DNA of 64,000 bases from IMG/VR virus record IMGVR_UViG_3300042340_000379, positions 143,856 through 207,855 of that record, one strand, 5' to 3'. Under the pieces are notes generated by a model. That model worked only from the letters and a program-made list of their open reading frames with translations, did not search any database and was not told the DNA's origin. How positions within the stretch are numbered: the first letter of the stretch is position 1; the number at the start of each line of letters is the position of its first letter. The position numbers were made by a program, and so were the translations under genes. Positions 31,290-64,000 of this stretch are shown piece after piece.

Positions 31290-32372
31290 TTAGGCTCCCA
31301 CTGTTACAGCATGTCGGTTTAAGTTATCCAATGCCATAATGTTAGCAAAATCAGGGTGCTGAGGAACATAAATTCCAGCATTTGCGGGAAGCCGACCTTT
31401 AAACAAGTAAGCACAGCCACCAAACAACATACGACCGGAAGTAGGAACAAACTGATTAAAGTTGTTTCGAATCTCACCTTGAACTAACTCAAAGAAGTTA
31501 GCAAGAGCATGCTTGGTAAGATCGGTGAAGTCGATCATCTCATTGTTGTCAGCAGGGTAAAAATAGGTAGAGCGCCCATTCTCTCCAGGAATAGGATTAG
31601 CCAGCGCAGTCATGACATCATCAAGGTCTAGTTGACCTCCAACACGTTGGATCATCAAAGGATTGATTTTAATCATAGAAGCCAAAGCCTTACCACCAGC
31701 TAAAGTTGATCCTTTAACTCCATCATAGGAACTACGAAGTAGGATGTTGTTGCGAGGGCCGATCGCAGTAATATCCAGTGTGCCGCCGCCAATGTCAGCG
31801 CCGATCACATTTCCGACAGAAGGAAGGTGGTTAAGTTCACGAGCCATAATAATCGCGTCAACCCCTTCGGGCCGAGGAGCCTCAGGATAAATGCGAACTT
31901 TCATGTCAAATGTACCCTTGTCAGACGTATAGGTGTACTCAAAAGTATCAGTGAGTTTTTCGCGAAGGAACTCGCCTACAGTTCGGCCATCGGTTCGGCG
32001 CTTACTTGGGTCAGGTAGACTCCATTGAAGTACAACCTCGTAATTGGTTTTGTTTCCAATGGGGCCAAGAGTAGAAAGGAGAAAAGGAATAAAGTACTTG
32101 GGATCTAGCTTATCGCGGTTAACCAATCCACTCGCGGCGGCACCATACTCAGAAGCGCGATCGCCAATATGAAAGCGACCAAAATCCCCCTCAACAATAA
32201 TAGAGTCGCTGCCAGGGTCAATTGCGTCACCACCAGGAAAGATGGGAGCAACAATAGATTTTAGATAAATCGGCTGGGTGTGAATCCCATGACTAATAGC
32301 CAGAGTAGAAAAGTTGCCAACATCAATAGCGTGCTGAGTTTTCATACAAAAATTTGGGTAATAAGTGTTCAA
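31290..32372 (-). CDS. parM: actin-like ATPase, ParM/StbA family
   Basis: AIDVGNFST (phosphate 1), PEG, GADIGGGTLD (phosphate 2), LFGGCA (adenosine) and PDFAN motifs. Confidence 0.85.
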   Translation of the reverse strand: MNTYYPNFCMKTQHAIDVGNFSTLAISHGIHTQPIYLKSIVAPIFPGGDAIDPGSDSIIVEGDFGRFHIGDRASEYGAAASGLVNRDKLDPKYFIPFLLSTLGPIGNKTNYEVVLQWSLPDPSKRRTDGRTVGEFLREKLTDTFEYTYTSDKGTFDMKVRIYPEAPRPEGVDAIIMARELNHLPSVGNVIGADIGGGTLDITAIGPRNNILLRSSYDGVKGSTLAGGKALASMIKINPLMIQRVGGQLDLDDVMTALANPIPGENGRSTYFYPADNNEMIDFTDLTKHALANFFELVQGEIRNNFNQFVPTSGRMLFGGCAYLFKGRLPANAGIYVPQHPDFANIMALDNLNRHAVTVGA

Positions 32373-35637: not shown

Positions 35638-38600
35638 ATGAAATCCTTCACCAAATCTCTGAATTCTTTTGTTACCCGCTCCTTCTCTGTGGGTAAGCGC
35701 CAAATGATCTCTAAGGTCAAAATCGTTCACTCTAAGCGCGAGTTCATCTCGCGTGTTTCTGGCACCTTTCGCCAGCGCTTGAACCCTGCTACTCCAAAGT
35801 CCATTTTTGCTTGGGACGATGTTCAGCTCTCCTTAGCCTTTACTTATGGCCAAGGTTCTCTAGGAATCAAAGCTGACCGCGCCAACGCTGGCATTGGGTT
35901 TGGTAGTGATACCAAACCTAAATCTAAATCTGTTAAGTCCGATTCCATCAAAATCGCACACACCTTTAAGGAGATCCTCGCCCAAACCAAAGCTACCGCT
36001 GTCAAAGTCTTCGAGGCCATTTCCACCGTTTCTAAACTGATTACTCCCGATCTTCTGCTCTCTTCTACAGGTAAGCAGCTCTATGGAGCTGCTCTTAAAA
36101 ACCGGATTGCCAAACTTGTTCGTGAGGGCTACGCAGCCCCTGTTTCTCAACCTGCAGCGGTAAAGGCCGTTGACTTCATGGCGCTTGCTCAAGAGCGCTG
36201 CGCCCAAAGCCTTGCTGCGATCGAAGCAGCTATGGGCTTCACATCCACGGGCACCGTTGTGGCCATGCTTCAATCCGGCCAGGAGCCTGCGCCCATTGCG
36301 CGGCAGTCCGCCTCAAATATGGAGAACATCTCATTGTTTGAACTCAGGGCAAAAGAATTTCCAGCTCCTTCTGTCGAGGAGCTAATGTCTGACCTAAATG
36401 GCGATCGCGCCACCCGCGCTGAAAAGTGCAAAGCCATCTTGGCTAAGCACAACCTCAACACAGTTGGTGAGCTGATCGCTCGCGGCATGGTGTCTCGCAC
36501 CCGCAAAGACTTCTGGCTCGATAGTGCAAGCACTGCGTTCAGTGTGATGCTACTGGGCCACACTCTTGGCCAAATGCCCGCGCCTCTGGACTTCAAGGCT
36601 GGGAATACCTACCTGGTAGGTTTCCCTCTGTTTGATCGCACCTCTGGCGACAAGCAGATTTCCCCGTACAAGTGCGTCATAGGAGATATCGATCTCCTGA
36701 TGGCGTCTGTTCGTAGAGAAGAGCACGACATAAAGAACCTATCTTCTCCTGCTACCAAGAAGGTGTTTAAGAAGCACTTTAAGGTGCTAGAAGATAACTG
36801 CAAAGCCCTGGGCCTGTGGTTGTCTAAGGACGAAGTGGCTAACATGGCCGCTGCGTTGGCCATTAATGAAGTGGCTACCAAGCCCACCACTTTCGCGGTG
36901 CTGGCTTCCCACCTCTGCGAAGTCCTTGATGCTATGGGCATGATGCCCAACCGCGTGTATGCGGTGAATGCTGCGTGGAACCTTCCCCGCTACAAAGCGG
37001 ATCGCGTTATTGTGCGTAAGTTGGTAACCGCACTGCTGCGGGCCCAAGAGGGCATCGGCATGACAGGGTTCAAGTTCATCGACATGTCCACCAGCGAGCA
37101 AACTGGTGAGCTATTTGATGAAGTCGTTATCTGTGGCCAACGCTTTGTCATGGATGACGAAGGCGTTATCTTTGATGACGCAGGTACATCAAAACGGCTA
37201 AACCAGATAATGTTGGCTGCTCCCATTAAGGTAGGCCGCAGTCTACACCCCAACGAGTTCTCTATCTTGAGCGCTCACGACGTGTTGTTGTATCTGCTGG
37301 ACAACATTGTGCTGCCCATGCTCAACCGAAAGGATGTCAAATCTGACAAGAGCTTGGAAATCAGCCGTGTTGAGGAAACCAACGCTCGTGCTGCCCAGTC
37401 CATCAAATCGTTTATTGGCAAATCCATGCCTCTAAACGAGCGGGCTGTTGCGCTTGGTGTTGAAGATGCTGCCTCCAGCATTCTGACCAGCGGCGAAATC
37501 AGCTGCGTTGTCAAGTGGCATCAATCTCTCTTCCGTCGCAACATTGCGGCTGAGGGTTCAGCAGAGATCGCCATCTTCAAAGAAGGCATGCTAGTTGGGC
37601 CTGATAGTCCCTACAAACGCTCGGCTGATGCTACCGAGTATATGATCTTTAGCCAAATGGAGTTAAAGACCTCCACCAATTTCACCGACTATCACCCTCT
37701 CATCGAGCCTATGATCGCTCATGGCAAAGTGATTCAGCCTTTTGGCAACATGAATGCTGTAAGCCTTTCTGCTCACGGTACTCACTATGCCAACCTTGAT
37801 GTGAGCATTCAGAAAGAAGCTGTCAAAGCTTTCTGGGCTAACCAAGGCCTTGATGAGCAACAGCTGCGCTCTAAGTTCAACCTTGAAGGTGTAGTCGGTG
37901 ATGTGTGGATGCACATTGCTGAAGAAACCCTCAACTTCTTGTCCTACAAGGGCTCTAAGCGTTTCAAGCGCTCGGCTAACTTGTACGCTCAAGTCACCAG
38001 CTTCGCGTTTGAAGAGACCAGCCGCTTCCAGTGGTCTGGTCACGTTGATCACCAGATCACCGGCCTGGCGCTCAAGGCTGTGTTAGCTCCTAGCTACGTT
38101 TTCTCTGGGCCTGGTATGGCCTATATGAACTCGCACAAGCGTGCTCAATACGAGATGCGCTACCCCTTGGCTGGTGGCATGCATGACTACTACGATCGCG
38201 CTGCTGTGTTCAGTAACTTCGCGATTGATGATACTGCTATCATCACCAATCCTCTCACGGGCTGGAGCCATATTGACCTGGACATCAAAGTCCGGGAAGG
38301 GCAGGAGACTGGCTTGTTTATCGTGAACGAACATGGCCATCAGGTTCCTCTAAAAGCTGAGCACAATGGTGTGCTTTGCAAAATTCGTTTCCGCACTGTC
38401 GATAAGTTCTCCGTTAACGGCGTATTGGAGTGTCGCCTCTTTTATAAAGTGTCTGAGTACGACTTCAAACTGCGGGCTGGCTATAAAGCCATGACTACCT
38501 ATCATGACGGGTCGATCTTTGACCATAACGCCTACGCTCCCGAGTGGGACATCATCATCCCTGGTGATGCCAACAAAACCCTCGACCTTTTAACTTGCTT

Positions 38601-41127
38601 CCTCCCCGAGGCTGCTGAGTCATTCGGTCGCGCTCCTGAGGGCACTTTGGTTGATGGCGTTGATGTACGTGCCCTGCTGCGTTCACTTAATGCTGAGGCA
38701 TTTGGTCGTGAGGGCATCATTAAAGATGCGCCCAACGACAGCCTCTATGTCAACATGCTCATGTTGAATGAGGGTCGCTACGAGCAACTCCGTAAGTTGT
38801 TCATGACCGCATTTGGTCAAGTTATATGGATGAGCGTTGAGTCTGTAGAAATGCAGATCTTTGTCAACAAATTCTATTCTGCCAACGTTGCTGGTGGTGG
38901 CAAATGGCGCGAGCTGTCTGAAGCTGAGCTGGAAACAGTTGCTAAAGATGGTCTACCCAAGGGTGCTCGCGGCTTCTGCGACACCGCTGATATCAATGAC
39001 CAGAGCAACATTCTGGTTACCTACACTGAGAACGGGAAGTGCATGTCCCTTCACCGTCAGTGGGTCTACGCTTCCACGCCCGAGCTTGGCATGTACATGC
39101 TAGGTAAGCCTGAGTACACAACTGTGAGCCAGGCCGTTTCTGAATCCAGCGTTATGGGCAACGTCATCTATGACCTGGCCCTACGTAGCAACAAAGCTGC
39201 GTTGGAATTCGTCAACCGTGGCGAAATCAACCGCGTGCGCTACTCTCTTATCCATCGCCTAGCAAAAGGCCTTCCTATTGCTATTGATGGCGGCGAAATT
39301 CCTGTGATGAAAATCCAGGGCTCGATCGCTGAAATCGTGGGTAGTTGCAGCGCCAACTTGGCTGCTGCATACGCGGAAGGGCCTAACCAGTTCTTCCAAG
39401 TACTCCTGGAAATCTGCCAGGACAAAGTGCTGCGCTTTGAAGCCGACAACAGCACCTGGGTTAGCATCTACCTCCCTCTTCTCGCTTCTTACGGCGGGCA
39501 GGATCTTGAATCCAACGAAGGCATGACTCTTGCTAGCAAAGTCTATGAGTTGATGACCTCTTGGTACAACGGGGCCGACCCTAAGTCTCAGGGCATCAAA
39601 GTCATCGCGGGGGAAATCTCCAAGATGATGAATAAGTTGGCCGATGGTGGCCGGATGCAGAAGTCTTTGACCTACGGCCCTAAAGGCGTAGGTTTCAAGG
39701 TCGCCGCATTGCCCAACATTCCTACTGGGGAAGTGTGGGTCTATGCTGGCGGTGAAGTCTTTGCCAAAATGCGCAAGCTGTTTGGCAAAGACTTTGCTGA
39801 AAACGCCAAAACTGGCGATAGCTACATCGGTCTGGTGCGTGCGCCTATGACTCGTGTTGCTGTGCTCAAAGTCGTAGTCATCACCAAAGATGACAACCGC
39901 GCCTTGGCCTACAAACTCAATGGCGTGCAGGGCTACATCAGCCCATTCTCCCAGTATTTCAACATGGGAGACTTTGACGGTGATGGTGACTTGTCTATGG
40001 ACGTTAGTGATATCGTCCGTAGCGGTGAGCTTCAACAGGACTCTTTTGCGTCCATGCTCAAGTTCCAGCGGGAAACCCTGGGCTACGACATGATGCTACC
40101 CGAGTTCTGGAAGTCTGCTGCACCCGAGCAGTACTACGCCGACCACTTCTATGTACAGAGCTACACCTCTGTCATGGCTAAAATCGGTGGGCGCGGCCTG
40201 AACTTGGAATCTTCCGAGAAGGCCAACGTCATCACCCGTGCTCAACTGCTAGCCGGTGAGCACGGTGCAATCGGTCAGCAGACCGGCTATGTGTCCAGCT
40301 CATATCAAACCCAGTTCTTTATCACGCTGGCAGCTGAGATTCTGGGTCACCACAACGTAGCTGCATTCGAGTGGATTAAAGGCTCCACCTATCAAACCCA
40401 GGCCTTGTACGAAGTAGCGTTAGGCGGCTACTCTCCTGATATGTGCCGCGTGGCGTTTGGTCTTCTTGACCGCGCCTTCCGTTTGAGCACCACTCAAGAT
40501 TGGTGGCTAAAGCGTGTTGACGCTGAGGTTGCCGGTATGTTGCTTGACGGTACCAAGCACACAGCTTCTTCTCTCCTAGGTACCGAGCCTATGGATAAAG
40601 AGAAGACCCTGTTCACTTCCCTGAGTGAAGGCCAAGTGTTCCCCGCAATGCAGGCTTGCGGTTTTGGCTGGAATGGCTTTGAGGATGACCGCAACCAAGT
40701 GCAACAGTTTGTTAAAGCTGCTGCGCTCGCTGGCGTTGCTAAAAAGCGTGTCAGCGAAATCAAGAACGATGATGCTGGAATTGGTAGCGGCACCTACCAA
40801 AAGCTGGTGAAAACCTACGGCAAGAACATGGCCCTTGTCATGTGTCTTGCTCAACGTCTAATGGACATCAGCCGTAATAAGGCTGAGTTTGGTAAGGACT
40901 ACGACAACGAACTCCGCGCTGAACTCGACCAAATGCTCAAAGGTGTTAAAAGCGATTCTATTTCCGTCGATCTCTATCGTCGGATTGAGAAGACCCTAGA
41001 CGACTCTGTGTCCGCAGAAGTCGTAAGCTATGACAGCGCTGCTATCAACAAGCTTTGCCGCTTTGTTGAAACCGAAGACGCTGCTCCCATTACTCTGGAG
41101 GTTGCTGCCCAAGTTATCGCCAATTAA
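35638..41127 (+). CDS. single-chain two-barrel DNA-dependent RNA polymerase (non-virion, early-expressed)
   Basis: NMGDFDGD (D1445-D1449), LVRAP (R1401), GPKGVGFKVAALP (DPBB start) and beta-like DFKLRAGYKA...WDIIIP lysine pair (K944/K950). Confidence 0.8.
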   Translation: MKSFTKSLNSFVTRSFSVGKRQMISKVKIVHSKREFISRVSGTFRQRLNPATPKSIFAWDDVQLSLAFTYGQGSLGIKADRANAGIGFGSDTKPKSKSVKSDSIKIAHTFKEILAQTKATAVKVFEAISTVSKLITPDLLLSSTGKQLYGAALKNRIAKLVREGYAAPVSQPAAVKAVDFMALAQERCAQSLAAIEAAMGFTSTGTVVAMLQSGQEPAPIARQSASNMENISLFELRAKEFPAPSVEELMSDLNGDRATRAEKCKAILAKHNLNTVGELIARGMVSRTRKDFWLDSASTAFSVMLLGHTLGQMPAPLDFKAGNTYLVGFPLFDRTSGDKQISPYKCVIGDIDLLMASVRREEHDIKNLSSPATKKVFKKHFKVLEDNCKALGLWLSKDEVANMAAALAINEVATKPTTFAVLASHLCEVLDAMGMMPNRVYAVNAAWNLPRYKADRVIVRKLVTALLRAQEGIGMTGFKFIDMSTSEQTGELFDEVVICGQRFVMDDEGVIFDDAGTSKRLNQIMLAAPIKVGRSLHPNEFSILSAHDVLLYLLDNIVLPMLNRKDVKSDKSLEISRVEETNARAAQSIKSFIGKSMPLNERAVALGVEDAASSILTSGEISCVVKWHQSLFRRNIAAEGSAEIAIFKEGMLVGPDSPYKRSADATEYMIFSQMELKTSTNFTDYHPLIEPMIAHGKVIQPFGNMNAVSLSAHGTHYANLDVSIQKEAVKAFWANQGLDEQQLRSKFNLEGVVGDVWMHIAEETLNFLSYKGSKRFKRSANLYAQVTSFAFEETSRFQWSGHVDHQITGLALKAVLAPSYVFSGPGMAYMNSHKRAQYEMRYPLAGGMHDYYDRAAVFSNFAIDDTAIITNPLTGWSHIDLDIKVREGQETGLFIVNEHGHQVPLKAEHNGVLCKIRFRTVDKFSVNGVLECRLFYKVSEYDFKLRAGYKAMTTYHDGSIFDHNAYAPEWDIIIPGDANKTLDLLTCFLPEAAESFGRAPEGTLVDGVDVRALLRSLNAEAFGREGIIKDAPNDSLYVNMLMLNEGRYEQLRKLFMTAFGQVIWMSVESVEMQIFVNKFYSANVAGGGKWRELSEAELETVAKDGLPKGARGFCDTADINDQSNILVTYTENGKCMSLHRQWVYASTPELGMYMLGKPEYTTVSQAVSESSVMGNVIYDLALRSNKAALEFVNRGEINRVRYSLIHRLAKGLPIAIDGGEIPVMKIQGSIAEIVGSCSANLAAAYAEGPNQFFQVLLEICQDKVLRFEADNSTWVSIYLPLLASYGGQDLESNEGMTLASKVYELMTSWYNGADPKSQGIKVIAGEISKMMNKLADGGRMQKSLTYGPKGVGFKVAALPNIPTGEVWVYAGGEVFAKMRKLFGKDFAENAKTGDSYIGLVRAPMTRVAVLKVVVITKDDNRALAYKLNGVQGYISPFSQYFNMGDFDGDGDLSMDVSDIVRSGELQQDSFASMLKFQRETLGYDMMLPEFWKSAAPEQYYADHFYVQSYTSVMAKIGGRGLNLESSEKANVITRAQLLAGEHGAIGQQTGYVSSSYQTQFFITLAAEILGHHNVAAFEWIKGSTYQTQALYEVALGGYSPDMCRVAFGLLDRAFRLSTTQDWWLKRVDAEVAGMLLDGTKHTASSLLGTEPMDKEKTLFTSLSEGQVFPAMQACGFGWNGFEDDRNQVQQFVKAAALAGVAKKRVSEIKNDDAGIGSGTYQKLVKTYGKNMALVMCLAQRLMDISRNKAEFGKDYDNELRAELDQMLKGVKSDSISVDLYRRIEKTLDDSVSAEVVSYDSAAINKLCRFVETEDAAPITLEVAAQVIAN

Positions 41128-41133
41128 TCGCTA

Positions 41134-41286
41134 GGGCCCTATAGGGCCCGCAAAAGTCCGATTGGGGCCCAACGCGGGCCCTTTACGTCCCGTGAAAGTC
41201 CTTTTAGGGCCCGCGTTGGGCCTTTCATGTCCCGTCGAGGGCCCTAAACGTCCCGCAAAAGTCCGATTAGGGCCCGTCAAGGGCCC
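41134..41286 (+). repeat. GGGCCC/AAGTCC array, copy 2
   Basis: 10-11-bp spaced cores immediately after the RNAP stop. Confidence 0.85.
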
Positions 41287-45132: not shown

Positions 45133-45285
45133 GGGCCCTTGGCGGGCCCTAAACGGCCCGTGAAAGTCCTTTTAGGGCCCGCAAAAGTCCGATTAGGGCC
45201 CGCGTCGGGCCCTTCATGTCCCGTGACGGGCCCTAAACGGCCCGCGAAAGTCCTTTTAGGGCCCGCGTTGGGCCACTTAGGGCCC
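45133..45285 (+). repeat. GGGCCC/AAGTCC array, copy 3
   Basis: Same unit vocabulary as the other arrays. Confidence 0.85.
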
Positions 45286-47179: not shown

Positions 47180-47353
47180 GGGCCCTAAACGGCCCGCGAA
47201 AGTCCTTTTAGGGCCCGCGAAAGTCCTTTTAGGGCCCGCGTTGGGCCACTTAGGGCCCGTCAAGGGACGTAAAGGGCCCGCGTTGGGCCGTTTAGGGCCC
47301 GTGAAAGTCCGTTCATGTCCCACGCTGGGCCCTAAACGGCCCGCCAAGGGCCC
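47180..47353 (+). repeat. GGGCCC/AAGTCC array, copy 4
   Basis: Same unit vocabulary as the other arrays. Confidence 0.85.
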
Positions 47354-49353: not shown

Positions 49354-49415
49354 GACTGCCAACCGGACTTTAGGGCAAACAGCCCCAGTTTCCTGGAGTA
49401 GCAACAGAATAGCTA

Positions 49416-49640
49416 GGGCCCGCGTCGGGCCCTAAAAGGCCCGTGAAAGTCCGATTAGGGCCCACGTCGGGCCCTAAAAGGCCCGTGAAAGTCCGATTAG
49501 GGCCCGCCAAGGGCCATGAAGGGCCCGCGTCGGGCCGTTTAGGGCCCGTGAAAGTCCTTTTAGGGCCCGAGGGGGTAAAGTTGGGCCCTTGGCGGGCCGT
49601 TTAGGGCCCGTGAAAGTCCTTTTAGGGCCCGCCAAGGGCC
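49416..49640 (+). repeat. GGGCCC/AAGTCC array, copy 5 (longest)
   Basis: Contains an internal 42-bp duplication. Confidence 0.85.
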
Positions 49641-52742: not shown

Positions 52743-52895
52743 GGGCCCTAAAAGGCCCGTCAAAGTCCTTTTAGGGCCCGCTGTGGGACGTTTAGGGCCC
52801 GTCAAAGTCCTTTTAGGGCCCAACGTGGGCCTTTTAGGGCCCGTCAAAGTCCTTTTACGTCCCGCCAAGGGCCGTTTAGGGCCCGCGTTGGGCCC
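52743..52895 (+). repeat. GGGCCC/AAGTCC array, copy 6
   Basis: Same unit vocabulary as the other arrays. Confidence 0.85.
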
Positions 52896-56800: not shown

Positions 56801-57713
56801 CTAATTACAGCTCCCGGCAACAAATCGAGCTTTGCGTCTTGGACTGGCCCGGATGAACTGTAATCCCAAGAATGCAATTAATACTCAATATAAAGACTGG
56901 TACATACTATGCGACAGTTGACTCCTGCTCAGAAGATGGGATTTCCACTTGGAATGTATTACGTGGTTAGTGGGGTAGAAAAAATCGAACTTTTTAGAGG
57001 CCCGTACGATTACCTCTCTATAGCCGTTGGGGTGGTTAACAGTTATACAGGCAAAGGGCTCTGGGTGATGAATAGCCAAGGGCACAAGTTGGACAAAAAT
57101 AAATACCAGAACTCCGAAGGCGAAGCATGGATTGCCAGTTAAACCAGCGCTTATGTCTAACTATCAGTTTGTAGAAACTGTCCATTCAATTGTTACAGCG
57201 GTCGCTTATCCAGTCTTTTGGGTTGTAGCCGTTACGTTCTTTTGGATCGCGCTGGGAGATGAAGACTACAAAATCCACTGGGTCTTGGCACTGATCTTGC
57301 TTAGTGTCGTTTTGTTTGAAGTAGGTCTATTGCATTAAAGGAAGGTTTTTTGAGGCAAGAACATCTAGACGAGATTGCTAAGTACCTGTCTTTTTTCCAG
57401 TAGGGTTTTAAGTGCCATAACCAAGAGCACTATCATTCGCCGGATAAAGTTTGATGAACACCTGATTTTGGGAGAGTCAAGAGTGAATATTTATCTGACA
57501 AACCAGACCGCCGCTGAAATCGTTCAGATCCTTCAGCACCATCAGTATGACGGCACCTTCCCCGATCAGCGGGTAGCAATTGAACTTTTTCTGAATGCCT
57601 ATGAACAGGCATTTCAGGAAAATGAGGCAAAAGTGACAGAGGAACACAATAGCTTTTTGCGGGCACGGATGGCATCGTTCAAGGCCAGCAAGATGGCAAA
57701 CCCCCATGACTAA
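53868..57713 (+). other. hyperplastic cluster of small accessory genes (e.g. 54365-54691, 54747-54938, 54935-55309, 56054-56311, 56375-56863, 56909-57142, 57132-57338)
   Basis: Short co-oriented ORFs, shared leader repeats, dense HIP1 sites. Confidence 0.6.
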
Positions 57714-57927
57714 CCCCACCCCCGACCAACTGATTAACTTATTTCAGCCCACTCCCTGGCAAGCCGGGAACCCGCCAGGGCCGGGGTGGTATTTGGTGAC
57801 GGTAGACATTAGCGGTAGCCGGGAAACCGAGTATGCCTACTGGCTACCCGGAGCCTGGGACGATGCGGAGAATGTTGTAGCCTGGCAACCCCTGCCGGAA
57901 CCGTACCAAGGTAAGGGAAAGGCTTGA
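57706..57927 (+). CDS. DUF551-like protein
   Basis: W...P...GWYLVT...VVAWQPLPEPY. Confidence 0.7.
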   Translation: MTNPTPDQLINLFQPTPWQAGNPPGPGWYLVTVDISGSRETEYAYWLPGAWDDAENVVAWQPLPEPYQGKGKA

Positions 57928-57929
57928 TA

Positions 57930-58071
57930 GGGCCCGCAAAAGTCCTTTTAGGGCCCGTCAAGGGCCTTTTACGTCCCGACGAGGGCCCTAAAGGGCCCGC
58001 AAAAGTCCTTTTAGGGCCCGTCAAGGGCCTTTTAGGGCCCGCAAAAGTCCTTTTAGGGCCCTAAAAGGGCC
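57930..58071 (+). repeat. GGGCCC/AAGTCC array, copy 7
   Basis: Alternating 11-bp and 10-bp units. Confidence 0.85.
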
Positions 58072-58086
58072 ATAGGAAAAATCAGT

Positions 58087-58350
58087 ATGGATATTGATAT
58101 AGAGCAACTTCTGCTTTTAGCGCAACTTGCGAGTCATAGCTGGCGATCCGTAACAGCTAAAATAGATATACAGCTTTTGCAAGCTGTATATGATAGAAAG
58201 ATCGTCTGCAGCAAGCCAGATGTTGTAGTTGATCGCATGCAAGCGTTAATGCTGGCTCGTGGCGTGCCGTTGCTTGGCACTCATGTGCATATAGAGCAAC
58301 AAGACGAATCTCACCTAGATTGGGATTCAATATTAGGTACCTGTCAATAA
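58087..58350 (+). CDS. hypothetical protein
   Basis: AGGA RBS; 87 aa. Confidence 0.5.
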   Translation: MDIDIEQLLLLAQLASHSWRSVTAKIDIQLLQAVYDRKIVCSKPDVVVDRMQALMLARGVPLLGTHVHIEQQDESHLDWDSILGTCQ

Positions 58351-58559
58351 AAGAATGGGTCTAGTTAATTTGCTAGAGCACCTAAGTTCAAGATTCTTTA
58401 GTGGAGCCATTGCTAACCTGCGGGACGCTCATGACAATGCGATCGCGACAGGTGAAGTGGATTTTTAGCGTCCGTACACTTTCCACGCGATCGCCATTGA
58501 CGATTCAATGTATTGGAGTGAAGATAGAGGAGCGCTGAGGTTAATGCCCTCTTAGGGCT

Positions 58560-58892
58560 TTGCAAGCACCACCGATGACGCGCCCTCAACCCCTCTTAGG
58601 GATGCCCGAAAGGGCTGTCGTTGAGCAGAGAATTGCCATGGAAAAGATGATTCACTTGGATGAGCCTCCATACATGGAGGCTCCCGAAGATCCTGATAGC
58701 AGCCCCATCTGGTCAACTTATAACGGGGTATTGATCGAATGCCACACCCGCTGCGTTGACCAGGCTCCGAGCGAAATGCGCGATCTTGGATACATAGAGG
58801 TCGCAAACCCTCACCCATTTGGGGAGCTATGGTGCAAAGAGTCCATGCTAGCTGAAGGATTGCCCTTGATTGAGCGAGAGGTCTTGGTATGA
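58560..58892 (+). CDS. hypothetical acidic protein
   Basis: Coupled (ATGA overlap) to the Cas11d-like gene. Confidence 0.5.
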   Translation: MQAPPMTRPQPLLGMPERAVVEQRIAMEKMIHLDEPPYMEAPEDPDSSPIWSTYNGVLIECHTRCVDQAPSEMRDLGYIEVANPHPFGELWCKESMLAEGLPLIEREVLV

Positions 58893-59722
58893 GTGATGCA
58901 TTAACCCAACTTCGCTACGGGTTCAGAGGGCTTGCCCAACTAGGGTCGTCGTTCGAGGAGTGCTTGGTAGCCGTGCTGCCAGCTCTCAATAGAATCGTGT
59001 CCGACGCCGAGAATTGGCAGTTAGTTTTTGACCTACTGCACTGGGACTGGGAGGGTCTGGGCAGGGCTCCCGTTCCTATTAAGTTGCAAGACCAGCTATT
59101 ACTGGCTCTGTCACCCTGGAAATCGGAGACCGCAGCCATTCTAAGGCGACTGGAAGCATCGGCTCAAGAGTGGGCTGATGCACTCAACGCCGCTGGCCTG
59201 AGTCCCTCTGAGGCTTTGGGGCTGGCAAAGGCTGACATAGAAATGACTGTTGAAAAGGAGTCAGCGCTGACTGCCGTGGCTACTCACAAGAGCGCGATCG
59301 CTCCCCCGCTAGAGATCGTGCGCCAGTATCGTCAGTTCTATCGAGCCAGCAAGATGTACTCGCCCGAGAGAACCAATGCGCTAAAGCCTCTGCTGTTAGC
59401 CAAGGAAGTCATCCAGCGCAGTTCCTCGACTGGTGAAGATCTAGCCGTAGAAGTCGCTGGCCGCATTGCCGCCCACCTGGCCCAGGTGCGTCGTGGCACG
59501 GCCAAGGGTCGATGGGTCATCTCCAGCCAGGATGCCGAGCGGCAGGCGATTTCTGAGTTTGCCAGATTCCTGGTTCATCATCTGCTAGGTGAGAGATTCC
59601 GGGGCGACAAGTCTCAGTTCAGTTCCAAGACTGGCATCGGACTGATTGAGGATGCCTGCTTTTTCCTGTACCTACTAGAGCAAGAGAAAGAAAACGATTC
59701 CAAGGAGGCTTCGCGTGGATAA
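58889..59722 (+). CDS. fusion of an unknown N-terminal domain to a Cas11d / Cas10d C-terminal (type I-D small subunit)-like domain
   Basis: YRQFYRASKMYSPERTNALKPL...TAKGRWVISSQDAERQAISEFARFLV...FRGD...LIEDACFFLYLLEQEKEN follows the cyanobacterial Cas10d C-terminal pattern as I recall it; internal ATG at 59243. Confidence 0.75.
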   Translation: MSDALTQLRYGFRGLAQLGSSFEECLVAVLPALNRIVSDAENWQLVFDLLHWDWEGLGRAPVPIKLQDQLLLALSPWKSETAAILRRLEASAQEWADALNAAGLSPSEALGLAKADIEMTVEKESALTAVATHKSAIAPPLEIVRQYRQFYRASKMYSPERTNALKPLLLAKEVIQRSSSTGEDLAVEVAGRIAAHLAQVRRGTAKGRWVISSQDAERQAISEFARFLVHHLLGERFRGDKSQFSSKTGIGLIEDACFFLYLLEQEKENDSKEASRG

Positions 59723-59972
59723 AGTTCTTGGCTTAGATGTTGTCAACAGGTTCAACCCTGGCGGGATAGAAGCCACTCTGAAGATGTGGCATGAAGACCC
59801 TGAGCAGGTTGGCCGATGGGTAGTGTTCGATGGAGTTCAGGTTTCGCTGAGAGATCGCCTGAACAACCTGCGAGAGGGGGAACGATCGATCTGCCTGGTC
59901 GAAGAATTAGCGTCAGTCGTCGGGGACAATGCACATCTAACCCTGGGGGAATTCCTATACAACGACTTCTAA
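59715..59972 (+). CDS. hypothetical protein
   Basis: AGGAGG RBS; overlaps the end of the Cas11d-like gene. Confidence 0.55.
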   Translation: MDKVLGLDVVNRFNPGGIEATLKMWHEDPEQVGRWVVFDGVQVSLRDRLNNLREGERSICLVEELASVVGDNAHLTLGEFLYNDF

Positions 59973-60259
59973 CTCTTCTTCCACCGCCTCCACCCTCTAG
60001 GAGTAATACTCTCATGGCGAGGGGTGGTTCTTCTTCCGGGACGCCTCTCGCCATCACTTAAGCGCTCTAGATTTCCCTTATGATTGATAGAGCGCTTTCC
60101 ATTTTTGTGGTGAACCACAGTCCCATCGTTAGGCTTAGCACCGGCTATCCGACGATAGGCCCGTCGCCCATCTTTCCATCGACCATTACCCGTGCCCAGG
60201 ATGGCTGCTAGGCGCTTCTTCTTGTGGGCAGGTGACTGTTCGTAGCCAGGTTGAGGCAT
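59969..60259 (-). CDS. small HNH endonuclease-like protein
   Basis: VVHHKNGKRSINHKGNLERL. Confidence 0.7.
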   Translation of the reverse strand: MPQPGYEQSPAHKKKRLAAILGTGNGRWKDGRRAYRRIAGAKPNDGTVVHHKNGKRSINHKGNLERLSDGERRPGRRTTPRHESITPRGWRRWKKS

Positions 60260-60305
60260 AGGAGGGGTGCAGAACGCTCAATGTATTTTAACCAACGGAG
60301 ACTTT

Positions 60306-60626
60306 ATGCCTGAACGAAGAGACGGCTTTTACCTCATCTATGAGTGCGATGGCCACTGCCACTATGATTCAATGGTCATCAAGGCTATCCTCACGAAAGA
60401 GAGCCAAGCAATCGCGCACTACACCCGGATCGAGTCGGCATATCCCGCCAATGGGGCTGGCTGGCGAGTGAAGATGGGATACCTGCCCAAAGACCATGAT
60501 ATGCAAGGCGATGGCGACATCTTGCGCCAGATGGAAGATGTTACACCCACTATTCTGTGTTCACGCGATGCGAAATGGCTTCCGTCCTCCAAGCATCAAA
60601 GAGAGTCCCGTAAGGAGAGGATTTAA
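60306..60626 (+). CDS. hypothetical protein
   Basis: GGAG RBS before ATG 60306. Confidence 0.5.
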   Translation: MPERRDGFYLIYECDGHCHYDSMVIKAILTKESQAIAHYTRIESAYPANGAGWRVKMGYLPKDHDMQGDGDILRQMEDVTPTILCSRDAKWLPSSKHQRESRKERI

Positions 60627-60630
60627 CGCC

Positions 60631-61287
60631 ATGGCCAACCCTATCGACACGTCTCCCATATCCATCGCCCACGTTGACCTGTCAAAAGGCTCTCTCGCTT
60701 TCAAGGACGCACTGACTTTCACGCCCACGATGGACAGGAACCTGATCTTAGTCCTGGATGCGGAGACGGGCATCTACGCTTTTGCTGAGACTAGAGACCA
60801 ACTCATAGAGGAGATCCATGAACAGCTTCGATTCATGTGGCTCGCCTATGCCATGGAAGATGACTACAAGCTCACTCAAAGCGCGATCGCATTTAACAAC
60901 AACAACAACGAGGAAGCTATAACTAAGATAAAAGCAAAAATTATGGAGTTTGATTGCGAGGCAGATCCTGGCGATCCGCATTCCACTAAAACTGAGGGTG
61001 CTGAATTGACGCCAGAGCGAGCCTACTACTACGGCGAGCTACGCGAGACTTTTAGCTGGACATACGAAACCACTTCCCGGTTTGTATTCTCATGTCCTGC
61101 CTCTGCCGATCCCGACAGCTTGATGGACAGATATGCCTATGATGAGCGAGGCGGTGGAGACGGTGCCGATGGCGACTACGAGTCGAGTTGCAGTCGAGTC
61201 GAGTCCTTGGGCGCTCAACCTATCCCAGAGGAACATTTCAACGTCATGAAACTCTACTTGCCTGACCTGACTATATCCGAGGATTAG
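60631..61287 (+). CDS. chimeric-looking hypothetical protein (HicB-like N-terminal half)
   Basis: GIYAFAETRDQLIEEIHEQL pattern; junction at a HIP1 site plus (AAC)5. Confidence 0.45.
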   Translation: MANPIDTSPISIAHVDLSKGSLAFKDALTFTPTMDRNLILVLDAETGIYAFAETRDQLIEEIHEQLRFMWLAYAMEDDYKLTQSAIAFNNNNNEEAITKIKAKIMEFDCEADPGDPHSTKTEGAELTPERAYYYGELRETFSWTYETTSRFVFSCPASADPDSLMDRYAYDERGGGDGADGDYESSCSRVESLGAQPIPEEHFNVMKLYLPDLTISED

Positions 61288-61661
61288 GTTCTATCCCCCA
61301 TTCATGTTTGAGGAACTGTTTATACATTGGCTCGTTCATGGGGCGATCCTCCGTTGGATTGCCGCCTATTCTAGACGATGGATGGCGATCGTCTTTGTTC
61401 GTTAATTACCTTTCTGAGAGGAAATACTCATGCCAAAGATCACAGCAACAGAGGACTAAGCTATGCCAAACGGCCCATATAAAGTTAATCAAGACGACAT
61501 CGATCGCAGCAGCACCCTTGACCAGTCGGATCTAAACCGCTGGTACGTCCTCGTCTCTGGCACCATGCAGTTCGTTCGATCGCAGGAGGACGGCAAGACC
61601 CTGGTGCAACAGCTCAGGGACGACCTGCGGGCAATCTCTTGACGCTCATGGGTACATCAAA

Positions 61662-61700
61662 ACAAATCAACCGCCGAGGATTCCTCGGCGGTTGATTTGT
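61662..61700. terminator. 19-bp perfect inverted repeat, bidirectional terminator
   Basis: ACAAATCAACCGCCGAGGA-T-TCCTCGGCGGTTGATTTGT. Confidence 0.85.
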
Positions 61701-61773
61701 ATAGTACAAATTTTAAGGGACGGCGGTGTTAAGGAGATTTCAATCCCTGGTAGGGATTAGTGTGAACTCACCG
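61701..61773 (-). CRISPR. solitary type I-D-like repeat (61737-61773) plus 36-nt spacer (61701-61736): crRNA-like unit
   Basis: Minus strand CGGTGAGTTCACACTAATCCCTACCAGGGATTGAAAT, with AATCCCT/AGGGATT stem and ATTGAAAN handle, then spacer, then terminator. Confidence 0.75.
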
Positions 61774-61794
61774 CTCAATCTGTACTAAAAGTAG

Positions 61795-61818
61795 AGGGGC
61801 GGCGGTGTTGGGGAGAAC
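61795..61818 (-). promoter_or_regulatory. protospacer-like site with GTT PAM matching the adjacent spacer
   Basis: GTT-CTCCCCAACACCGCCGCCCCT versus spacer CTCCTTAACACCGCCGTCCCT (18/21). Confidence 0.65.
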
Positions 61819-61877
61819 AACACCCTAGCCGCCGCCCTGCTGGTCTGCCATCTCGGCAGTGAGATCCAGCTATGGAT

Positions 61878-61905
61878 ATAGTAGCAGATTTAAGCTAAAT
61901 AGCAA
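61878..61905 (-). promoter_or_regulatory. sigma70-like promoter for the crRNA-like unit
   Basis: TTGCTA-16 nt-TACTAT with a TG extended -10. Confidence 0.55.
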
Positions 61906-62051
61906 GAAATTTACTTTGGATAGTTGGGCAGAATCAGCCTATTTTTGTGCTTACAATAGGTGCAAGGCAATAAAAAAGCTGCGTGGGAACACAGCTTTAA
62001 GAATTACTTGTTTGGGAATCGACAGTCTATCTATCCACTCACTATTTTAAC

Positions 62052-63821
62052 ATGAAACAGAAAGCTGCATCGCCCTCCAGCAGTCAAAGTATCCAAGATT
62101 TAGAACTGAATCAACCTTGCGTGCCCCAAAGTATCCAGGATGCGCTAGCTAAGCTACCGTTAGAAACTCGGCAAAGAATAGAGAAGAACGTAGACAAGCT
62201 TAACCGAGGAATAGATAACGAAATCCTTAGACAAATTATTCACAAAGCTAATCCACAACTGTCTCATGCTTATGGAGTGGCTCTTGTTCGCAGCATACTT
62301 TGGCGTATGGAGCGGGACGCCCATCTATCCAAGATTAAAGAACCTATTTATAGACGCAGCATCCCTGTAAGTATTCTATGGTCAGCATTAAGTGGGGAGC
62401 CCTCTCGCATTTATAACAGCAATGCTAGGGCTCAGAAGTTTATGGGGGCTATTACCAAAGAGATAATCGACCCTCTATGGAGAAGCCGACTTATAACGAC
62501 AGTTCCCCATAACCGTAAGCAGCATAGGTGCCGAATCTTTAACCTAAGGCACGTCGCAAAAACAATCCACAACAGAGAACAAAAACCCCATATGCACCCA
62601 TTTGACTACAACCGCGTTGAAGATTACCAACTACCCCCAGTGGGAGTGGGTCAAGAGAAACTGCCTTTGCTCTGGTCTAAAGACAAAGCAAAGTACATGG
62701 CTATCACAAATGAGACCGGGGAATACCTCAGAAACTGCAAGTTCAGATTTGAGAGCATTGCATGGGATCGCATTGGGCTCTATTGGGCTAAGCAGTATGC
62801 AGACATAACAGCTAAATCTAGGGTGGCCTGCGATGCAAAGATCGGCTCGATCAAAAACGCTATTGAGGGTCTTGAATGGAAAATGGATGTTCAGCATACC
62901 GGGCAGTATCACATCCAGGGCCCAGGCCGTATGCATACCATTGGTGGAAGCATCGCGCTGCCAAAAGCATTCAGGCGGCTCTTTATCAGCCCTGTTAACA
63001 AGAACAACCTAGTACTCGAACTTGACCTTAAAAGCGCTCAGCTCGTTATCCTGAGTAAGTTTTTGGGGTGTACTGAGATCGTAAGCGCACTCCAGGACTG
63101 CCATAGAACGGGTAAATCTATTTGGGGTCTTATACAGCCAGAAGGGGAGTGTGTACCTAAGCGAGCGCTGAAAGTCCTAACCTATGGCCTATGCTTTGGA
63201 GCCAAGCGAGAAGACCTTCTCTATCTATGTAATAAGGAACTCTGGAAGACAGAATGCCCATTCGAGTTCTCAAAAGAAAGCCTAGATAAAGTTTTGGATG
63301 GGTTTTTAGCTCCTTTAGTCATTGAACGAGACAAATGGATGGCACGGTACACAAGCAAAGAGCTCAAAAAGAGAGGCACTAAGCTAACACACAAAAATGC
63401 TCTTGGGCTCGTATTTCAGGCAGGTAAAGAGCTGAAAGAATACGAGGCAAAGTGCAAAAAGTACGGGAAAAAGCCCCTGGATACTAAGATTGCAGGCCGT
63501 TTGCTGGCGCATTATGCCCAAGGTGAGGAGCAATTCATTATGCAGAGCTTCATTGCTAGCAGCGTGATGAAAGAGAACATATTAGACTTTAGCTATGACG
63601 GCCTAAGCGTTGAAGTTCCTATGAATTATGCAGAGATAACAGAACGATACGACGCATGGTTACAGGAATTTGACCCTGACCATCACTTTGAGTACTGTCC
63701 CCTATGGTTCAAACAGAACCCTGACCTAGATGGGCCCGACATGCTAGGCAATATGCTTCAGGAAAATTGGGAGGAGAAGTATAACCAAAAACCAGAAAAC
63801 CTTAAATATTTTCCTGAATAG
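62052..63821 (+). CDS. family A-like DNA polymerase / replication protein lacking an evident exonuclease domain
   Basis: GRMHT, ELDLKSAQL (motif A), KRALKVLTYGLCFG (motif B), HYAQGEE and FSYDGLSV (motif C). Confidence 0.7.
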   Translation: MKQKAASPSSSQSIQDLELNQPCVPQSIQDALAKLPLETRQRIEKNVDKLNRGIDNEILRQIIHKANPQLSHAYGVALVRSILWRMERDAHLSKIKEPIYRRSIPVSILWSALSGEPSRIYNSNARAQKFMGAITKEIIDPLWRSRLITTVPHNRKQHRCRIFNLRHVAKTIHNREQKPHMHPFDYNRVEDYQLPPVGVGQEKLPLLWSKDKAKYMAITNETGEYLRNCKFRFESIAWDRIGLYWAKQYADITAKSRVACDAKIGSIKNAIEGLEWKMDVQHTGQYHIQGPGRMHTIGGSIALPKAFRRLFISPVNKNNLVLELDLKSAQLVILSKFLGCTEIVSALQDCHRTGKSIWGLIQPEGECVPKRALKVLTYGLCFGAKREDLLYLCNKELWKTECPFEFSKESLDKVLDGFLAPLVIERDKWMARYTSKELKKRGTKLTHKNALGLVFQAGKELKEYEAKCKKYGKKPLDTKIAGRLLAHYAQGEEQFIMQSFIASSVMKENILDFSYDGLSVEVPMNYAEITERYDAWLQEFDPDHHFEYCPLWFKQNPDLDGPDMLGNMLQENWEEKYNQKPENLKYFPE

Positions 63822-63879
63822 GATAAGAAAAACTTATATAGTACGAATATAGTACATAAAAAGTTTAATAAATAAGCTG

Positions 63880-63922
63880 AGCTTATGATCAATATAACTA
63901 AAACTTATATTGATCATAAGCT
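63880..63922. repeat. 18-bp perfect inverted repeat in an AT-rich region (candidate origin or cruciform)
   Basis: AGCTTATGATCAATATAA-CTAAAAC-TTATATTGATCATAAGCT. Confidence 0.8.
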
Positions 63923-64000
63923 TTTATTTTTTCTATTTTGAATTTCTAAAAAAAATATATTTTGTGGCCCAGGGGGGGGGGGAGCCATTCGGAGGTCGCT

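What the first reader, a model, noticed from the sequence alone, without database searches (positions are those of the whole stretch)
58889..62052. Candidate phage system that co-opts host type I-D Cascade: Cas11d fusion plus self-targeting crRNA-like unit upstream of the replicase
Seen: within 3 kb and with no other cas genes in the window, there is a Cas11d-like fusion gene, a solitary I-D repeat-spacer-terminator unit, and a PAM-flanked partial target. The target lies about 30 bp from a copy of the recurrent phage promoter-like motif (61847-61859) that precedes the DNA polymerase-like gene. Known: type I-D is common in cyanobacteria; partially complementary crRNA-like RNAs (CreA/CreR type) direct Cascade to repress promoters; solitary repeats can act as RNA anti-CRISPRs (Racr). 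Inference: the phage supplies a guide and a modified small subunit to the host Cascade, either to poison it or to turn it into an RNA-guided regulator that couples phage replication to host CRISPR status. I know of no described system with this combination.
Basis: partly seen in the sequence, partly recalled or inferred. Interest (0 to 1): 0.93.

Follow-up and report, generated by a model that had tools for sequence, protein, structure and literature searches.

The report
Phage Cas11d mimic and solitary CRISPR repeat
A 208-kb lake cyanophage carries a stand-alone copy of the small subunit (Cas11d) of the host's type I-D CRISPR complex, fused to an unknown domain, and 2 kb away a single CRISPR repeat with a spacer-sized tail; both are most likely separate anti-CRISPR devices of kinds already described, not one new RNA-guided regulatory system.

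Summary
The main observations hold. ORF 58889-59722 (+) encodes 277 aa. Residues about 126-276 are a full Cas11d domain (hhalign E 8.5e-28 to a Cas10d C-terminus; Z 17.7 to PDB 7sba_J). Residues 1-125 are a helical domain found only in this fusion family. On the minus strand, 61773..61737 is a solitary repeat whose 3' 22 nt are identical to cyanobacterial arrays, one of them beside a complete I-D operon. A 36-nt spacer-like stretch and a terminator follow. The first 20 nt of that stretch match 61815..61796 at 17/20, with a GTT PAM. The phage has no Cas7d or Cas6d.

The linking interpretation is not supported. Twelve relatives' loci with the fusion gene show no such repeat. A second, unrelated phage has the same repeat unit without the gene or a self-match. 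The self-match has only 4 contiguous PAM-proximal pairs, with mismatches at positions 5, 6 and 17. The "recurrent motif" occurs once.

Both parts belong to known kinds: orphan viral cas genes and solitary repeat units (Racr). Katz et al. Table S3 lists a cas10d hit at matching coordinates in a Lake Mendota virus record. The best reading is two independent anti-I-D candidates, with the partial match a footprint of the spacer's origin.

The parts
58889..59722 (+). Gene for a 277-aa viral Cas11d fusion protein ('vCas11d'). Residues 1-125 (58889-59263) are a family-specific six-helix N-domain. Residues about 126-276 are a complete Cas11d small-subunit domain.
   Evidence: Cas11d homology and fold. 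(N-domain has no relatives outside this fusion family).
58399..60633 (.). Mobile module shared at 93% nucleotide identity with metagenomic phage contigs L001-L003. It holds an upstream ORF ending at 58892 (the longest frame starts at TTG 58560, 110 aa; the relative's gene call of 84 aa would correspond to an ATG near 58640) that overlaps the vCas11d start, then vCas11d, an 85-aa ORF (59715-59972, overlapping the vCas11d stop), a weak HNH-like ORF on the minus strand (59969-60259) and a 106-aa ORF (60306-60626).
   Evidence: blastn; gene calls; weak HNH hits.
61737..61773 (-). Solitary CRISPR repeat, taken as 37 nt by analogy with host repeats. Positions 61759..61738 are identical to the 3' 22 nt of cyanobacterial array repeats. 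The last base is T where the non-terminal repeats of the host arrays have C.
   Evidence: The Symploca array with this core lies beside a complete I-D operon.
61701..61736 (-). 36-nt spacer-like stretch directly 3' of the repeat. Host arrays of this repeat family have spacers of about 33-39 nt.
61655..61700 (-). Terminator of the repeat unit: an 18-pair hairpin (61700..61662) followed by a T-run on the minus strand.
61796..61818 (-). Partial match to spacer positions 1-20 (17/20; mismatches at spacer positions 5, 6 and 17), with GTT at 61818..61816 in the PAM position.
   Evidence: The GTN PAM of I-D is taken from PMC9123187.
61797..61839 (.). G+C-rich hairpin whose 3' arm (minus-strand sense) is the partial match.
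   Evidence: Fold (z -8.7 for the 191-nt stretch).
61853..61882 (+). Sigma-70-like site (9 of 12) upstream of the 589-aa gene; a consensus match only.
62052..63821 (+). 589-aa gene of unknown function. A family-A polymerase-like fold is a weak lead only.

Best explanation
Two separate counter-CRISPR elements sit in an accessory region of a roughly 208-kb lake cyanophage.

(1) vCas11d is a phage gene descended from the Cas11d-coding 3' end of a cyanobacterial cas10d, fused to a helical N-domain that exists only in this family. It most likely enters the host type I-D Cascade at a Cas11d position in the minor filament (Cas10d C-terminus plus two Cas11d). [quoted passage not shown] That would make it a dominant-negative subunit, as shown for the Cas-derived AcrIB3 and AcrIB4.

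(2) The solitary repeat, with its 36-nt tail and terminator, is most likely transcribed from the minus strand and cut by host Cas6d. It would then tie up Cas6d, Cas5d and Cas7d in useless complexes (Racr-like), or load as a guide that has no cleavable target.

(3) The PAM-flanked partial match 79 nt away is best read as a footprint of origin. A spacer taken by a host from this phage lineage would come from a PAM-flanked site. The repeat-spacer unit could then have been captured by recombination at that site. The mismatches in the seed now keep the phage from being targeted by its own RNA.

Shown: the homology, fold, solitary state, orientation, terminator, PAM and mismatch pattern, the distribution in relatives, and the absence of other cas genes. 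Inferred: expression, binding to Cascade, inhibition and the capture history.
For: Cas11d identity.

A viral family of its own: 33 viral C-domains and 28 host Cas10d C-termini fall on opposite sides of one branch (support 100/99). Viral domains are 34-45% identical to the best host, while the 120 listed host C-termini are 65-94% identical to the Coleofasciculus query.

The N-domain is always fused. Its profile found 24 hits among 1.84 billion representatives, and all seven of the new ones of about full length (246-301 aa) that were tested carry the Cas10d C-terminal domain.

All contexts are phage or prophage, without cas genes.

Precedent: Cas homologues that build defective complexes, and 358 orphan viral cas genes including six 'cas10d, CAS-I-D' hits of about 310-440 nt (five of them 411-438 nt). 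One lies at 203125-203562 of a Lake Mendota record, against 203140-203565 in this genome.

Repeat: the 22-nt core is identical to arrays in Caldora, Coleofasciculus, Symploca and Calothrix genomes, and sits beside a complete I-D operon in Symploca. The same architecture occurs in the unrelated phage G007. Racr precedent: at least 86 lines typed I-D in the stored part of a supplementary file of SRU hits, and Racrs cluster with acr genes.

Footprint reading: the match is far beyond chance, carries a GTT PAM, and has mismatches at positions 5 and 6.
Against: No transcript data exist. The sequencing runs found are DNA contigs from lake metagenomes. No promoter was found upstream of the repeat on the minus strand.

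No known acr or aca gene was recognised next to vCas11d.

The host is unknown, so a matching I-D system in the host is not shown. The same repeat core also occurs in Calothrix NIES-4105, where no Cas10d was found, so the repeat family may also serve type III systems.

Only 22 nt of the 36-nt stretch are clearly homologous to the nearby site, so the capture story is a reconstruction.

Nothing excludes a pro-phage use of Cascade.
Confidence: 0.5

Rival explanations
1. The phage RNA and vCas11d work together. They turn host I-D Cascade into a non-cutting, RNA-guided binder of the phage's own intergenic site (61796-61815) and so regulate the downstream putative replicase gene.
For: All three pieces lie within 3 kb. 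The partial match is real and has a GTT PAM. A promoter-like site lies 38 bp away. Regulation by partly matching crRNA-like RNAs is established for other subtypes (10.1101/2024.10.29.618823).
Against: The gene and the repeat do not co-occur in any relative examined. The phage G007 unit has no self-match. Only 4 contiguous PAM-proximal pairs precede the mismatches at positions 5 and 6, against at least 9 in described cases. The site is upstream of the -35 box, not over the promoter. The claimed recurrent motif is unique. The replicase label is unproven.
Confidence: 0.07
2. The repeat unit is a one-spacer guide for conflicts between phages. Host Cascade loaded with it destroys co-infecting relatives that carry the perfect protospacer. 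The phage's own copy is protected by seed mismatches. vCas11d is unrelated, or tunes this use.
For: The spacer-sized tail (36 nt), the proper PAM at the homologous site and escape-like mismatches in the phage's own copy. Virus-borne arrays are known, including cyanophage N-1 (PMC4916379).
Against: No contig with a perfect or better match was found. There were none in viral contigs, and all 37 metagenome hits had flanks without similarity. There is only one repeat, so no repeat-derived 3' end. An inhibitor of the same Cascade in the same genome would work against such a use.
Confidence: 0.12
3. The repeat unit is an inert scar of past recombination with a host array, and vCas11d has a role other than CRISPR inhibition.
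For: No promoter was found. There is no conservation of the unit in relatives. The final base differs from array repeats, and terminal array repeats are often degenerate. A 17-base pattern search of viral contigs would also return some chance hits, so not every solitary hit need be functional (own estimate).
Against: The hairpin and the 8-nt handle region are intact, and a strong terminator sits exactly one spacer-length downstream. The same layout is seen in an unrelated phage. vCas11d is a conserved, diversifying, phage-only family that keeps the whole Cas11d fold.
Confidence: 0.15

Closest known systems
Cas-derived anti-CRISPRs and orphan viral cas genes (AcrIB3, AcrIB4, AcrVIA2; Katz et al., bioRxiv 10.1101/2023.06.24.545427)
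   Same: A stand-alone homologue of one Cascade subunit in a virus that has no other cas genes. The proposed action is assembly into a defective complex. Six 'cas10d, CAS-I-D' hits of about 310-440 nt (five of them 411-438 nt, the size of the Cas11d domain) are in their Table S3. One is at the same coordinates as this gene, and one is in the record of my locus L117.
   Different: The copied subunit is the small subunit Cas11d, not Cas5, Cas8 or Cas3. It is fused to a novel 125-aa domain. The subtype is I-D and the hosts are cyanobacteria. Nothing has been tested. The survey labels the hits cas10d, and its main text mentions neither Cas11 nor a small subunit.
Cas11d of type I-D Cascade (McBride et al. 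2020, bioRxiv 10.1101/2020.04.18.045682; Schwartz et al. 2022, PMC9123187; PDB 7SBA)
   Same: The same fold over the whole 146-residue subunit (Z 17.7) and clear sequence homology.
   Different: Host Cas11d is translated from an internal start inside cas10d in a cas operon. Here it is a separate phage gene with an N-terminal extension, 34-45% identical to host versions that are themselves 65-94% identical to the query host sequence.
Solitary repeat units / RNA anti-CRISPRs (Racr; Camara-Wilpert et al. 2023, PMC10651486)
   Same: A single CRISPR repeat in an intergenic region of a phage without cas genes. It resembles repeats found beside a matching subtype and lies near a candidate anti-CRISPR gene. 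SRUs typed I-D are already listed in their supplement.
   Different: It is 2 kb rather than within 1 kb from the candidate acr. No promoter is evident. It carries a spacer-length tail ending in a terminator. That tail partly matches the phage itself.
CreA/CreR and viral Cracr regulatory crRNA-like RNAs (Liu et al., bioRxiv 10.1101/2024.10.29.618823)
   Same: A repeat-like element plus a spacer-like stretch with partial complementarity to a PAM-flanked site.
   Different: Described cases have at least 9 contiguous PAM-proximal pairs and target host cas or toxin promoters. Here there are 4 contiguous pairs and the site is in the phage. None is described for I-D.
AcrID1 of Sulfolobus viruses (PMC7689449)
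   Same: An inhibitor of a type I-D system that acts on the large-subunit side of the complex.
   Different: AcrID1 is a small protein unrelated to Cas proteins, from archaeal viruses. I found no anti-CRISPR reported for bacterial I-D systems in the searched literature.
CRISPR array of cyanophage N-1 (Chenard et al. 2016, PMC4916379)
   Same: A cyanophage that carries host-like CRISPR repeats without cas genes.
   Different: N-1 is reported to carry a multi-repeat array. Here there is one repeat.

Membership tests
Cas11d (type I-D small subunit) | Sequence homology to the C-terminal, separately translated part of Cas10d | tested here: met
   (E 8.5e-28 by hhalign; covers residues 5-143 of the 146-residue 7sba_J).
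Cas11d (type I-D small subunit) | Cas11d fold | tested here: met
   (TM 0.73; Z 17.7, rmsd 2.1 A over 135 residues).
Cas11d (type I-D small subunit) | Encoded inside cas10d of a I-D operon and made by internal translation | tested here: not met
   It is a stand-alone phage gene with an N-terminal fusion. The genome has no Cas7d, no Cas6d and no remainder of Cas10d. All 12 related loci are phage-like.
Cas11d (type I-D small subunit) | Assembles in the minor filament of Cascade | not testable with these tools
   Needs co-purification or a complex structure.
Cas-derived viral anti-CRISPR | Orphan cas homologue on a virus that lacks the cognate system | tested here: met
   A hit at the same coordinates is listed in Table S3 of Katz et al..
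Cas-derived viral anti-CRISPR | Sits among known acr, aca or anti-defence genes | tested here: inconclusive
   Neighbours have no family hits. The only recognisable neighbour is the solitary repeat 2 kb away.
Cas-derived viral anti-CRISPR | Inhibits CRISPR interference | not testable with these tools
   Needs an interference assay.
Solitary repeat unit / Racr | Repeat closely similar to host CRISPR repeats, with no second repeat nearby | tested here: met
   (22 nt identical). There is no degenerate copy in the flanks: 9 of 37 by my own position-by-position comparison of the sequence read.
Solitary repeat unit / Racr | Intergenic, on a mobile element without cas genes | tested here: met
Solitary repeat unit / Racr | Own promoter directly upstream; expressed as a small RNA | tested here: inconclusive
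   No minus-strand promoter-like site was found. No RNA runs were available. The terminator is on the correct strand.
Solitary repeat unit / Racr | Host carries the matching subtype | tested here: inconclusive
   The host is unknown. Four of five genomes with this repeat core have Cas10d. In Symploca the array adjoins a complete I-D operon. Calothrix NIES-4105 has the repeat but no Cas10d was found.
CreA/CreR/Cracr regulatory crRNA-like RNA | At least 9 contiguous PAM-proximal base pairs with a promoter target | tested here: not met
   The phage's own site has 4 contiguous pairs, then mismatches at positions 5 and 6. No convincing site was found in 156 kb of host loci, including five I-D loci, but the true host is unknown.
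CreA/CreR/Cracr regulatory crRNA-like RNA | Functional PAM beside the target | tested here: met
   GTT at 61818..61816 on the minus strand. The GTN PAM is taken from PMC9123187.
Virus-borne mini-CRISPR array | Two or more repeats flanking a spacer | tested here: not met
   Single repeat.
Virus-borne mini-CRISPR array | Spacer matches related viruses | tested here: inconclusive
   No meaningful match in viral or metagenome contigs. The collections may lack the relatives.

The most novel reading that the evidence does not exclude
The phage RNA and vCas11d act together. vCas11d remodels a host I-D Cascade loaded with the phage's crRNA-like RNA so that it binds without cutting. The target would be either the PAM-flanked partial match upstream of the putative replicase gene (self-regulation tied to host CRISPR status) or perfect matches in competing phages.
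Probability: 0.07. Interest if true: 0.85.

Novelty: new member of a known kind. Interest (0 to 1): 0.5.

Why it matters
I found no anti-CRISPR reported for bacterial type I-D systems in the searched literature. The only I-D inhibitor I found comes from archaeal viruses. I-D is common in cyanobacteria.

A small-subunit mimic with an added domain would be a new way to disable a Cascade from within. It would also be a tool to probe what Cas11d does during R-loop formation and nuclease activation.

The family is small, phage-only and well defined, with a confident model, so it is directly testable. The solitary repeat would be a candidate I-D RNA anti-CRISPR.

The PAM-flanked self-match is a small but instructive case of how a phage may pick up a repeat-spacer unit from the array that once targeted it.

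Tried and rejected
1. Nucleotide similarity of 57000-64000 to the phage and plasmid collections: none.
2. Rfam and tRNA scans of the window: nothing.
3. Single-sequence search of IMG/VR for the fusion protein: no confirmed locus. The alignment query gave three.
4. Search for the spacer or target 20-mer: none in viral contigs. The 37 metagenome hits all had unrelated flanks, so they are chance.
5. Host assignment through 167 spacers from fetched arrays: only chance-level hits. The best was 19/20 from a Caldora array, E 0.001 per query.
6. Test of whether the N-domain is a second, diverged Cas11 copy: hhalign N against C found nothing. No fold or feature relatives.
7. Test of whether the N-domain matches the Cas10d region before Cas11d: no.
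8. Degenerate second repeat upstream of the partial match: 9 of 37 identical, chance level (own comparison of the sequence).
9. A second direct repeat (61700-61717 against 61877-61894, 14/18), which would link the distal half of the spacer to the -10 box: expected about once by chance in this region, so dropped (own estimate).
10. A hairpin-plus-GGAAAT site in L117: not in a convincing context.
11. DNA runs from lakes: the same phage at low depth with one variant in the terminator loop; no RNA.
12. Taking all 41 viral pattern hits as solitary repeat units: rejected, because a 17-base pattern is expected to give some chance hits in a collection of this size (own estimate). Only the exact 21-nt match in G007 and the clear mini-arrays are relied on.

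Full report
SETTING. The window is the last 64 kb of a single 207,855-bp virus record. IMG/VR classes the record as linear and CheckV rates it 97% complete. It is a tailed phage: the window holds a major capsid protein (1295-2623, minus strand), a Mu-type portal (8648-10069, minus strand) and an Alp7A-like actin (31290-32372, minus strand). DNA runs that hold the region are lake-water metagenomes.

THE GENE. ORF 58889-59722 (+) encodes 277 aa and has no Pfam or PHROG hit.
- Its C-terminal half matches the extreme C-terminus of Cas10d/Csc3. TIGR03174 positions 817-944 of 946 give E 8.7e-16 (57.2 bits against a cut-off of 60). PADLOC Cas10_Id positions 898-1039 of 1048 give E 6e-24.
- That part of Cas10d is what type I-D systems also translate separately as the small subunit Cas11d (PMC9123187).
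- A profile of the protein and 25 homologues aligns to a Coleofasciculus Cas10d at residues 945-1097 of 1107, with probability 99.8 and E 8.5e-28. It also aligns to PDB chain 7sba_J, named Cas11d, over residues 5-143 of 146.
- The AlphaFold model (pLDDT 91.4) superposes on 7sba_J with TM 0.73 and Z 17.7, rmsd 2.1 A over 135 residues. The next unrelated fold scores Z 7.7.

THE N-DOMAIN. Residues 1-125 form six helices.
- They do not align to the rest of Cas10d or to the protein's own C-domain.
- They have no fold match above background and no look-alike in the Atlas.
- A profile of the N-domain, read against 1.84 billion representative proteins, found 24 proteins. All seven of the new hits of about full length (246-301 aa) that were tested also carry the Cas10d C-terminal domain.
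- The fusion is therefore the family's fixed architecture.

THE FAMILY.
- Homologues are 246-301 aa.
- All twelve loci examined are phage or prophage contexts. They contain capsid, Mu Gp36/Gp37, tape-measure and integrase genes, and many small unknown ORFs on one strand. None has cas genes nearby.
- In a maximum-likelihood tree of the Cas11d domain, 33 viral and 28 host sequences fall on opposite sides of one branch, with support 100/99.
- Viral domains are 34-45% identical to the nearest host Cas10d C-terminus. The 120 listed host C-termini are 65-94% identical to the Coleofasciculus query.
- This fits one capture followed by divergence in phages.
- The nearest relative (97% protein identity) shares with this phage only window 58399-60633, at 93% nucleotide identity. 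That stretch is a mobile module: an upstream ORF and an 85-aa ORF that both overlap the vCas11d reading frame, a weak HNH-like ORF on the other strand, and a 106-aa ORF.

THE REPEAT UNIT. On the minus strand, 61759..61738 is identical to the 3' 22 nt (hairpin plus handle) of array repeats in Caldora, Coleofasciculus, Symploca and Calothrix genomes. Those arrays have a period of 69-76 nt.
- In Symploca sp. SIO1C2 the array lies beside a WYL gene and Cas3d, Cas10d, Cas7d, Cas5d, Cas6d, Cas4 and Cas1.
- Four of the five genomes checked have Cas10d. No Cas10d was found in Calothrix NIES-4105, so the repeat family is not exclusive to I-D.
- In the phage the repeat is the only copy.
- Its last base is T, where the non-terminal repeats of the host arrays have C.
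- A 36-nt stretch follows (61736..61701), then an 18-pair hairpin and T-run that the scan scores as a terminator on the minus strand only.
- The unrelated, complete 119-kb phage G007 has the same layout: the same 22-nt core, a final T, 35 nt and a terminator, directly behind a gene on the same strand.
- Solitary repeats typed I-D in viruses are already catalogued: at least 86 lines typed I-D in the stored part of a supplementary file of SRU hits in the Racr paper.

THE PARTIAL MATCH.
- Positions 61716-61737 and 61795-61816 agree at 19 of 22.
- Read as crRNA against protospacer, spacer positions 1-20 match 61815..61796 at 17 of 20, with mismatches at positions 5, 6 and 17.
- The three bases on the 5' side are GTT, which fits the GTN PAM of I-D.
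- The next best site in 416 kb of both strands is 15 of 20 without a PAM. None of 2000 shuffles reaches the local alignment score. The match is real.
- Beyond 22 nt the similarity is weak.
- The matched site is the 3' arm of a G+C-rich hairpin and lies about 38 bp upstream of a promoter-like site at 61853-61882.

ARE THE PARTS ONE SYSTEM? The evidence says no.
- None of the twelve vCas11d loci has a I-D-like solitary repeat in the 1-10 kb held. Neither do the three whole IMG/VR records, which are fragments.
- None of the repeat-bearing viral loci encodes vCas11d. G007 lacks it over its whole genome.
- The G007 spacer has no self-match.
- The module shared with the nearest relative stops 1.1 kb before the repeat.

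WHAT THE PARTIAL MATCH MOST LIKELY IS.
- Spacers are taken from PAM-flanked sites. A spacer derived from this phage lineage will therefore have a PAM-flanked relative in the phage.
- Recombination between a spacer in a host array and its protospacer would place a repeat-spacer unit next to that site. The spacing of the two copies (79 nt) is close to one array period (about 73 nt). This step is inference.
- The mismatches at positions 5 and 6 are of the kind that let a phage escape targeting. They leave only four contiguous PAM-proximal pairs. The described regulatory crRNA-like RNAs were collected with at least nine.
- I therefore rate self-regulation as unlikely. I cannot exclude a guide role against relatives, but no contig with a better match was found. 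I also looked for sites in host I-D loci, as viral Cracr RNAs would have, and found none. The true host is unknown.

RELATION TO WHAT IS KNOWN.
- Katz et al. showed that Cas homologues in mobile elements act as anti-CRISPRs by building defective complexes, and listed 358 orphan viral cas genes.
- Their Table S3 contains six 'cas10d, CAS-I-D' hits of about 310-440 nt (five of them 411-438 nt, the size of the Cas11d domain). The predicted hosts, where given, are cyanobacteria.
- One hit is at 203125-203562 of a Lake Mendota record. The hit in this genome is at 203140-203565, so it is very probably this same gene. Another is the record of my locus L117.
- The main text of that survey mentions neither Cas11 nor a small subunit, and nothing there shows that these hits were tested.
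- Camara-Wilpert et al. showed that solitary repeats act as RNA anti-CRISPRs and tend to lie near acr genes.
- Both elements are therefore new, untested members of described kinds. What this work adds is the exact identity of the protein (a whole Cas11d plus a private N-domain), its phage-only clade, and the anatomy of the repeat unit.

VERDICT. The 'co-opted regulatory system' is not supported. Interest is moderate: a testable first candidate inhibitor of bacterial type I-D, from a family already flagged in a survey.

Noticed in passing
window about 41145-41275, 45145-45265, 47195-47305, 49415-49625, 52760-52885, 57925-58050: Clusters of a roughly 21-nt tandem element (core GGGCCCGYRAAAGTCCTTTTA) recur in six intergenic places. 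The ORF 57924-58064 is only this repeat translated.
   Followed up: partly
window 12917-22999 (+) and 35638-41127 (+): Two very long ORFs (3360 aa and 1829 aa) have no Pfam hit.
   Followed up: no
window 31290-32372 (-): An Alp7A-like actin (ALP_N and Alp7A_like_C hits at about the cut-off) in a roughly 208-kb phage; possibly used for DNA segregation or positioning.
   Followed up: no
window 59969-60259 (-): A weak HNH endonuclease-like ORF (Pfam E 0.003, PHROG E 0.002) lies on the opposite strand inside the module shared at 93% identity with other phages. It may be a homing nuclease that moves the module.
   Followed up: no
window 61768-61790 with 61701-61736 (minus-strand RNA): In the predicted fold, the 5' flank of the repeat pairs with the spacer-like stretch (61777-61787 with 61702-61712, plus a 6-bp GC stem). 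The repeat hairpin would then sit on top of a longer stem. The 191-nt stretch folds with z -8.7.
   Followed up: partly
L039:2123-2210 (G007:C1:47715-47800): An unrelated complete 119-kb phage has the same repeat core, also ending in T, then 35 nt and a terminator, directly after the stop codon of a gene on the same strand.
   Followed up: partly
window 62052-62231 (residues 9-60 of the 589-aa protein): A weak Aca2/YdiL-like hit (E 0.0055, below the cut-off) at the N-terminus of the gene downstream of the repeat unit, and a weak phmmer hit to AcrVA1 (E 0.14). Both are probably noise.
   Followed up: no
window 60631-61287 (+): The first 100 or so residues of this 218-aa ORF resemble HicB/PHD-like antitoxin folds in the Atlas (TM 0.6 normalised by the short hit only; feature score 0.79). 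This is a lead only.
   Followed up: no
window 61681: One lake metagenome run (X2) has A instead of T at the centre of the terminator loop. The four runs laid otherwise showed no differences over the parts they cover.
   Followed up: no
L018:6214-6255: A Stigonema MAG has a solitary copy of the same repeat, with a 5' half similar to the phage's. It lies between chromosomal genes, just upstream of an ORF that I read by eye as an aspartokinase-like start.
   Followed up: partly
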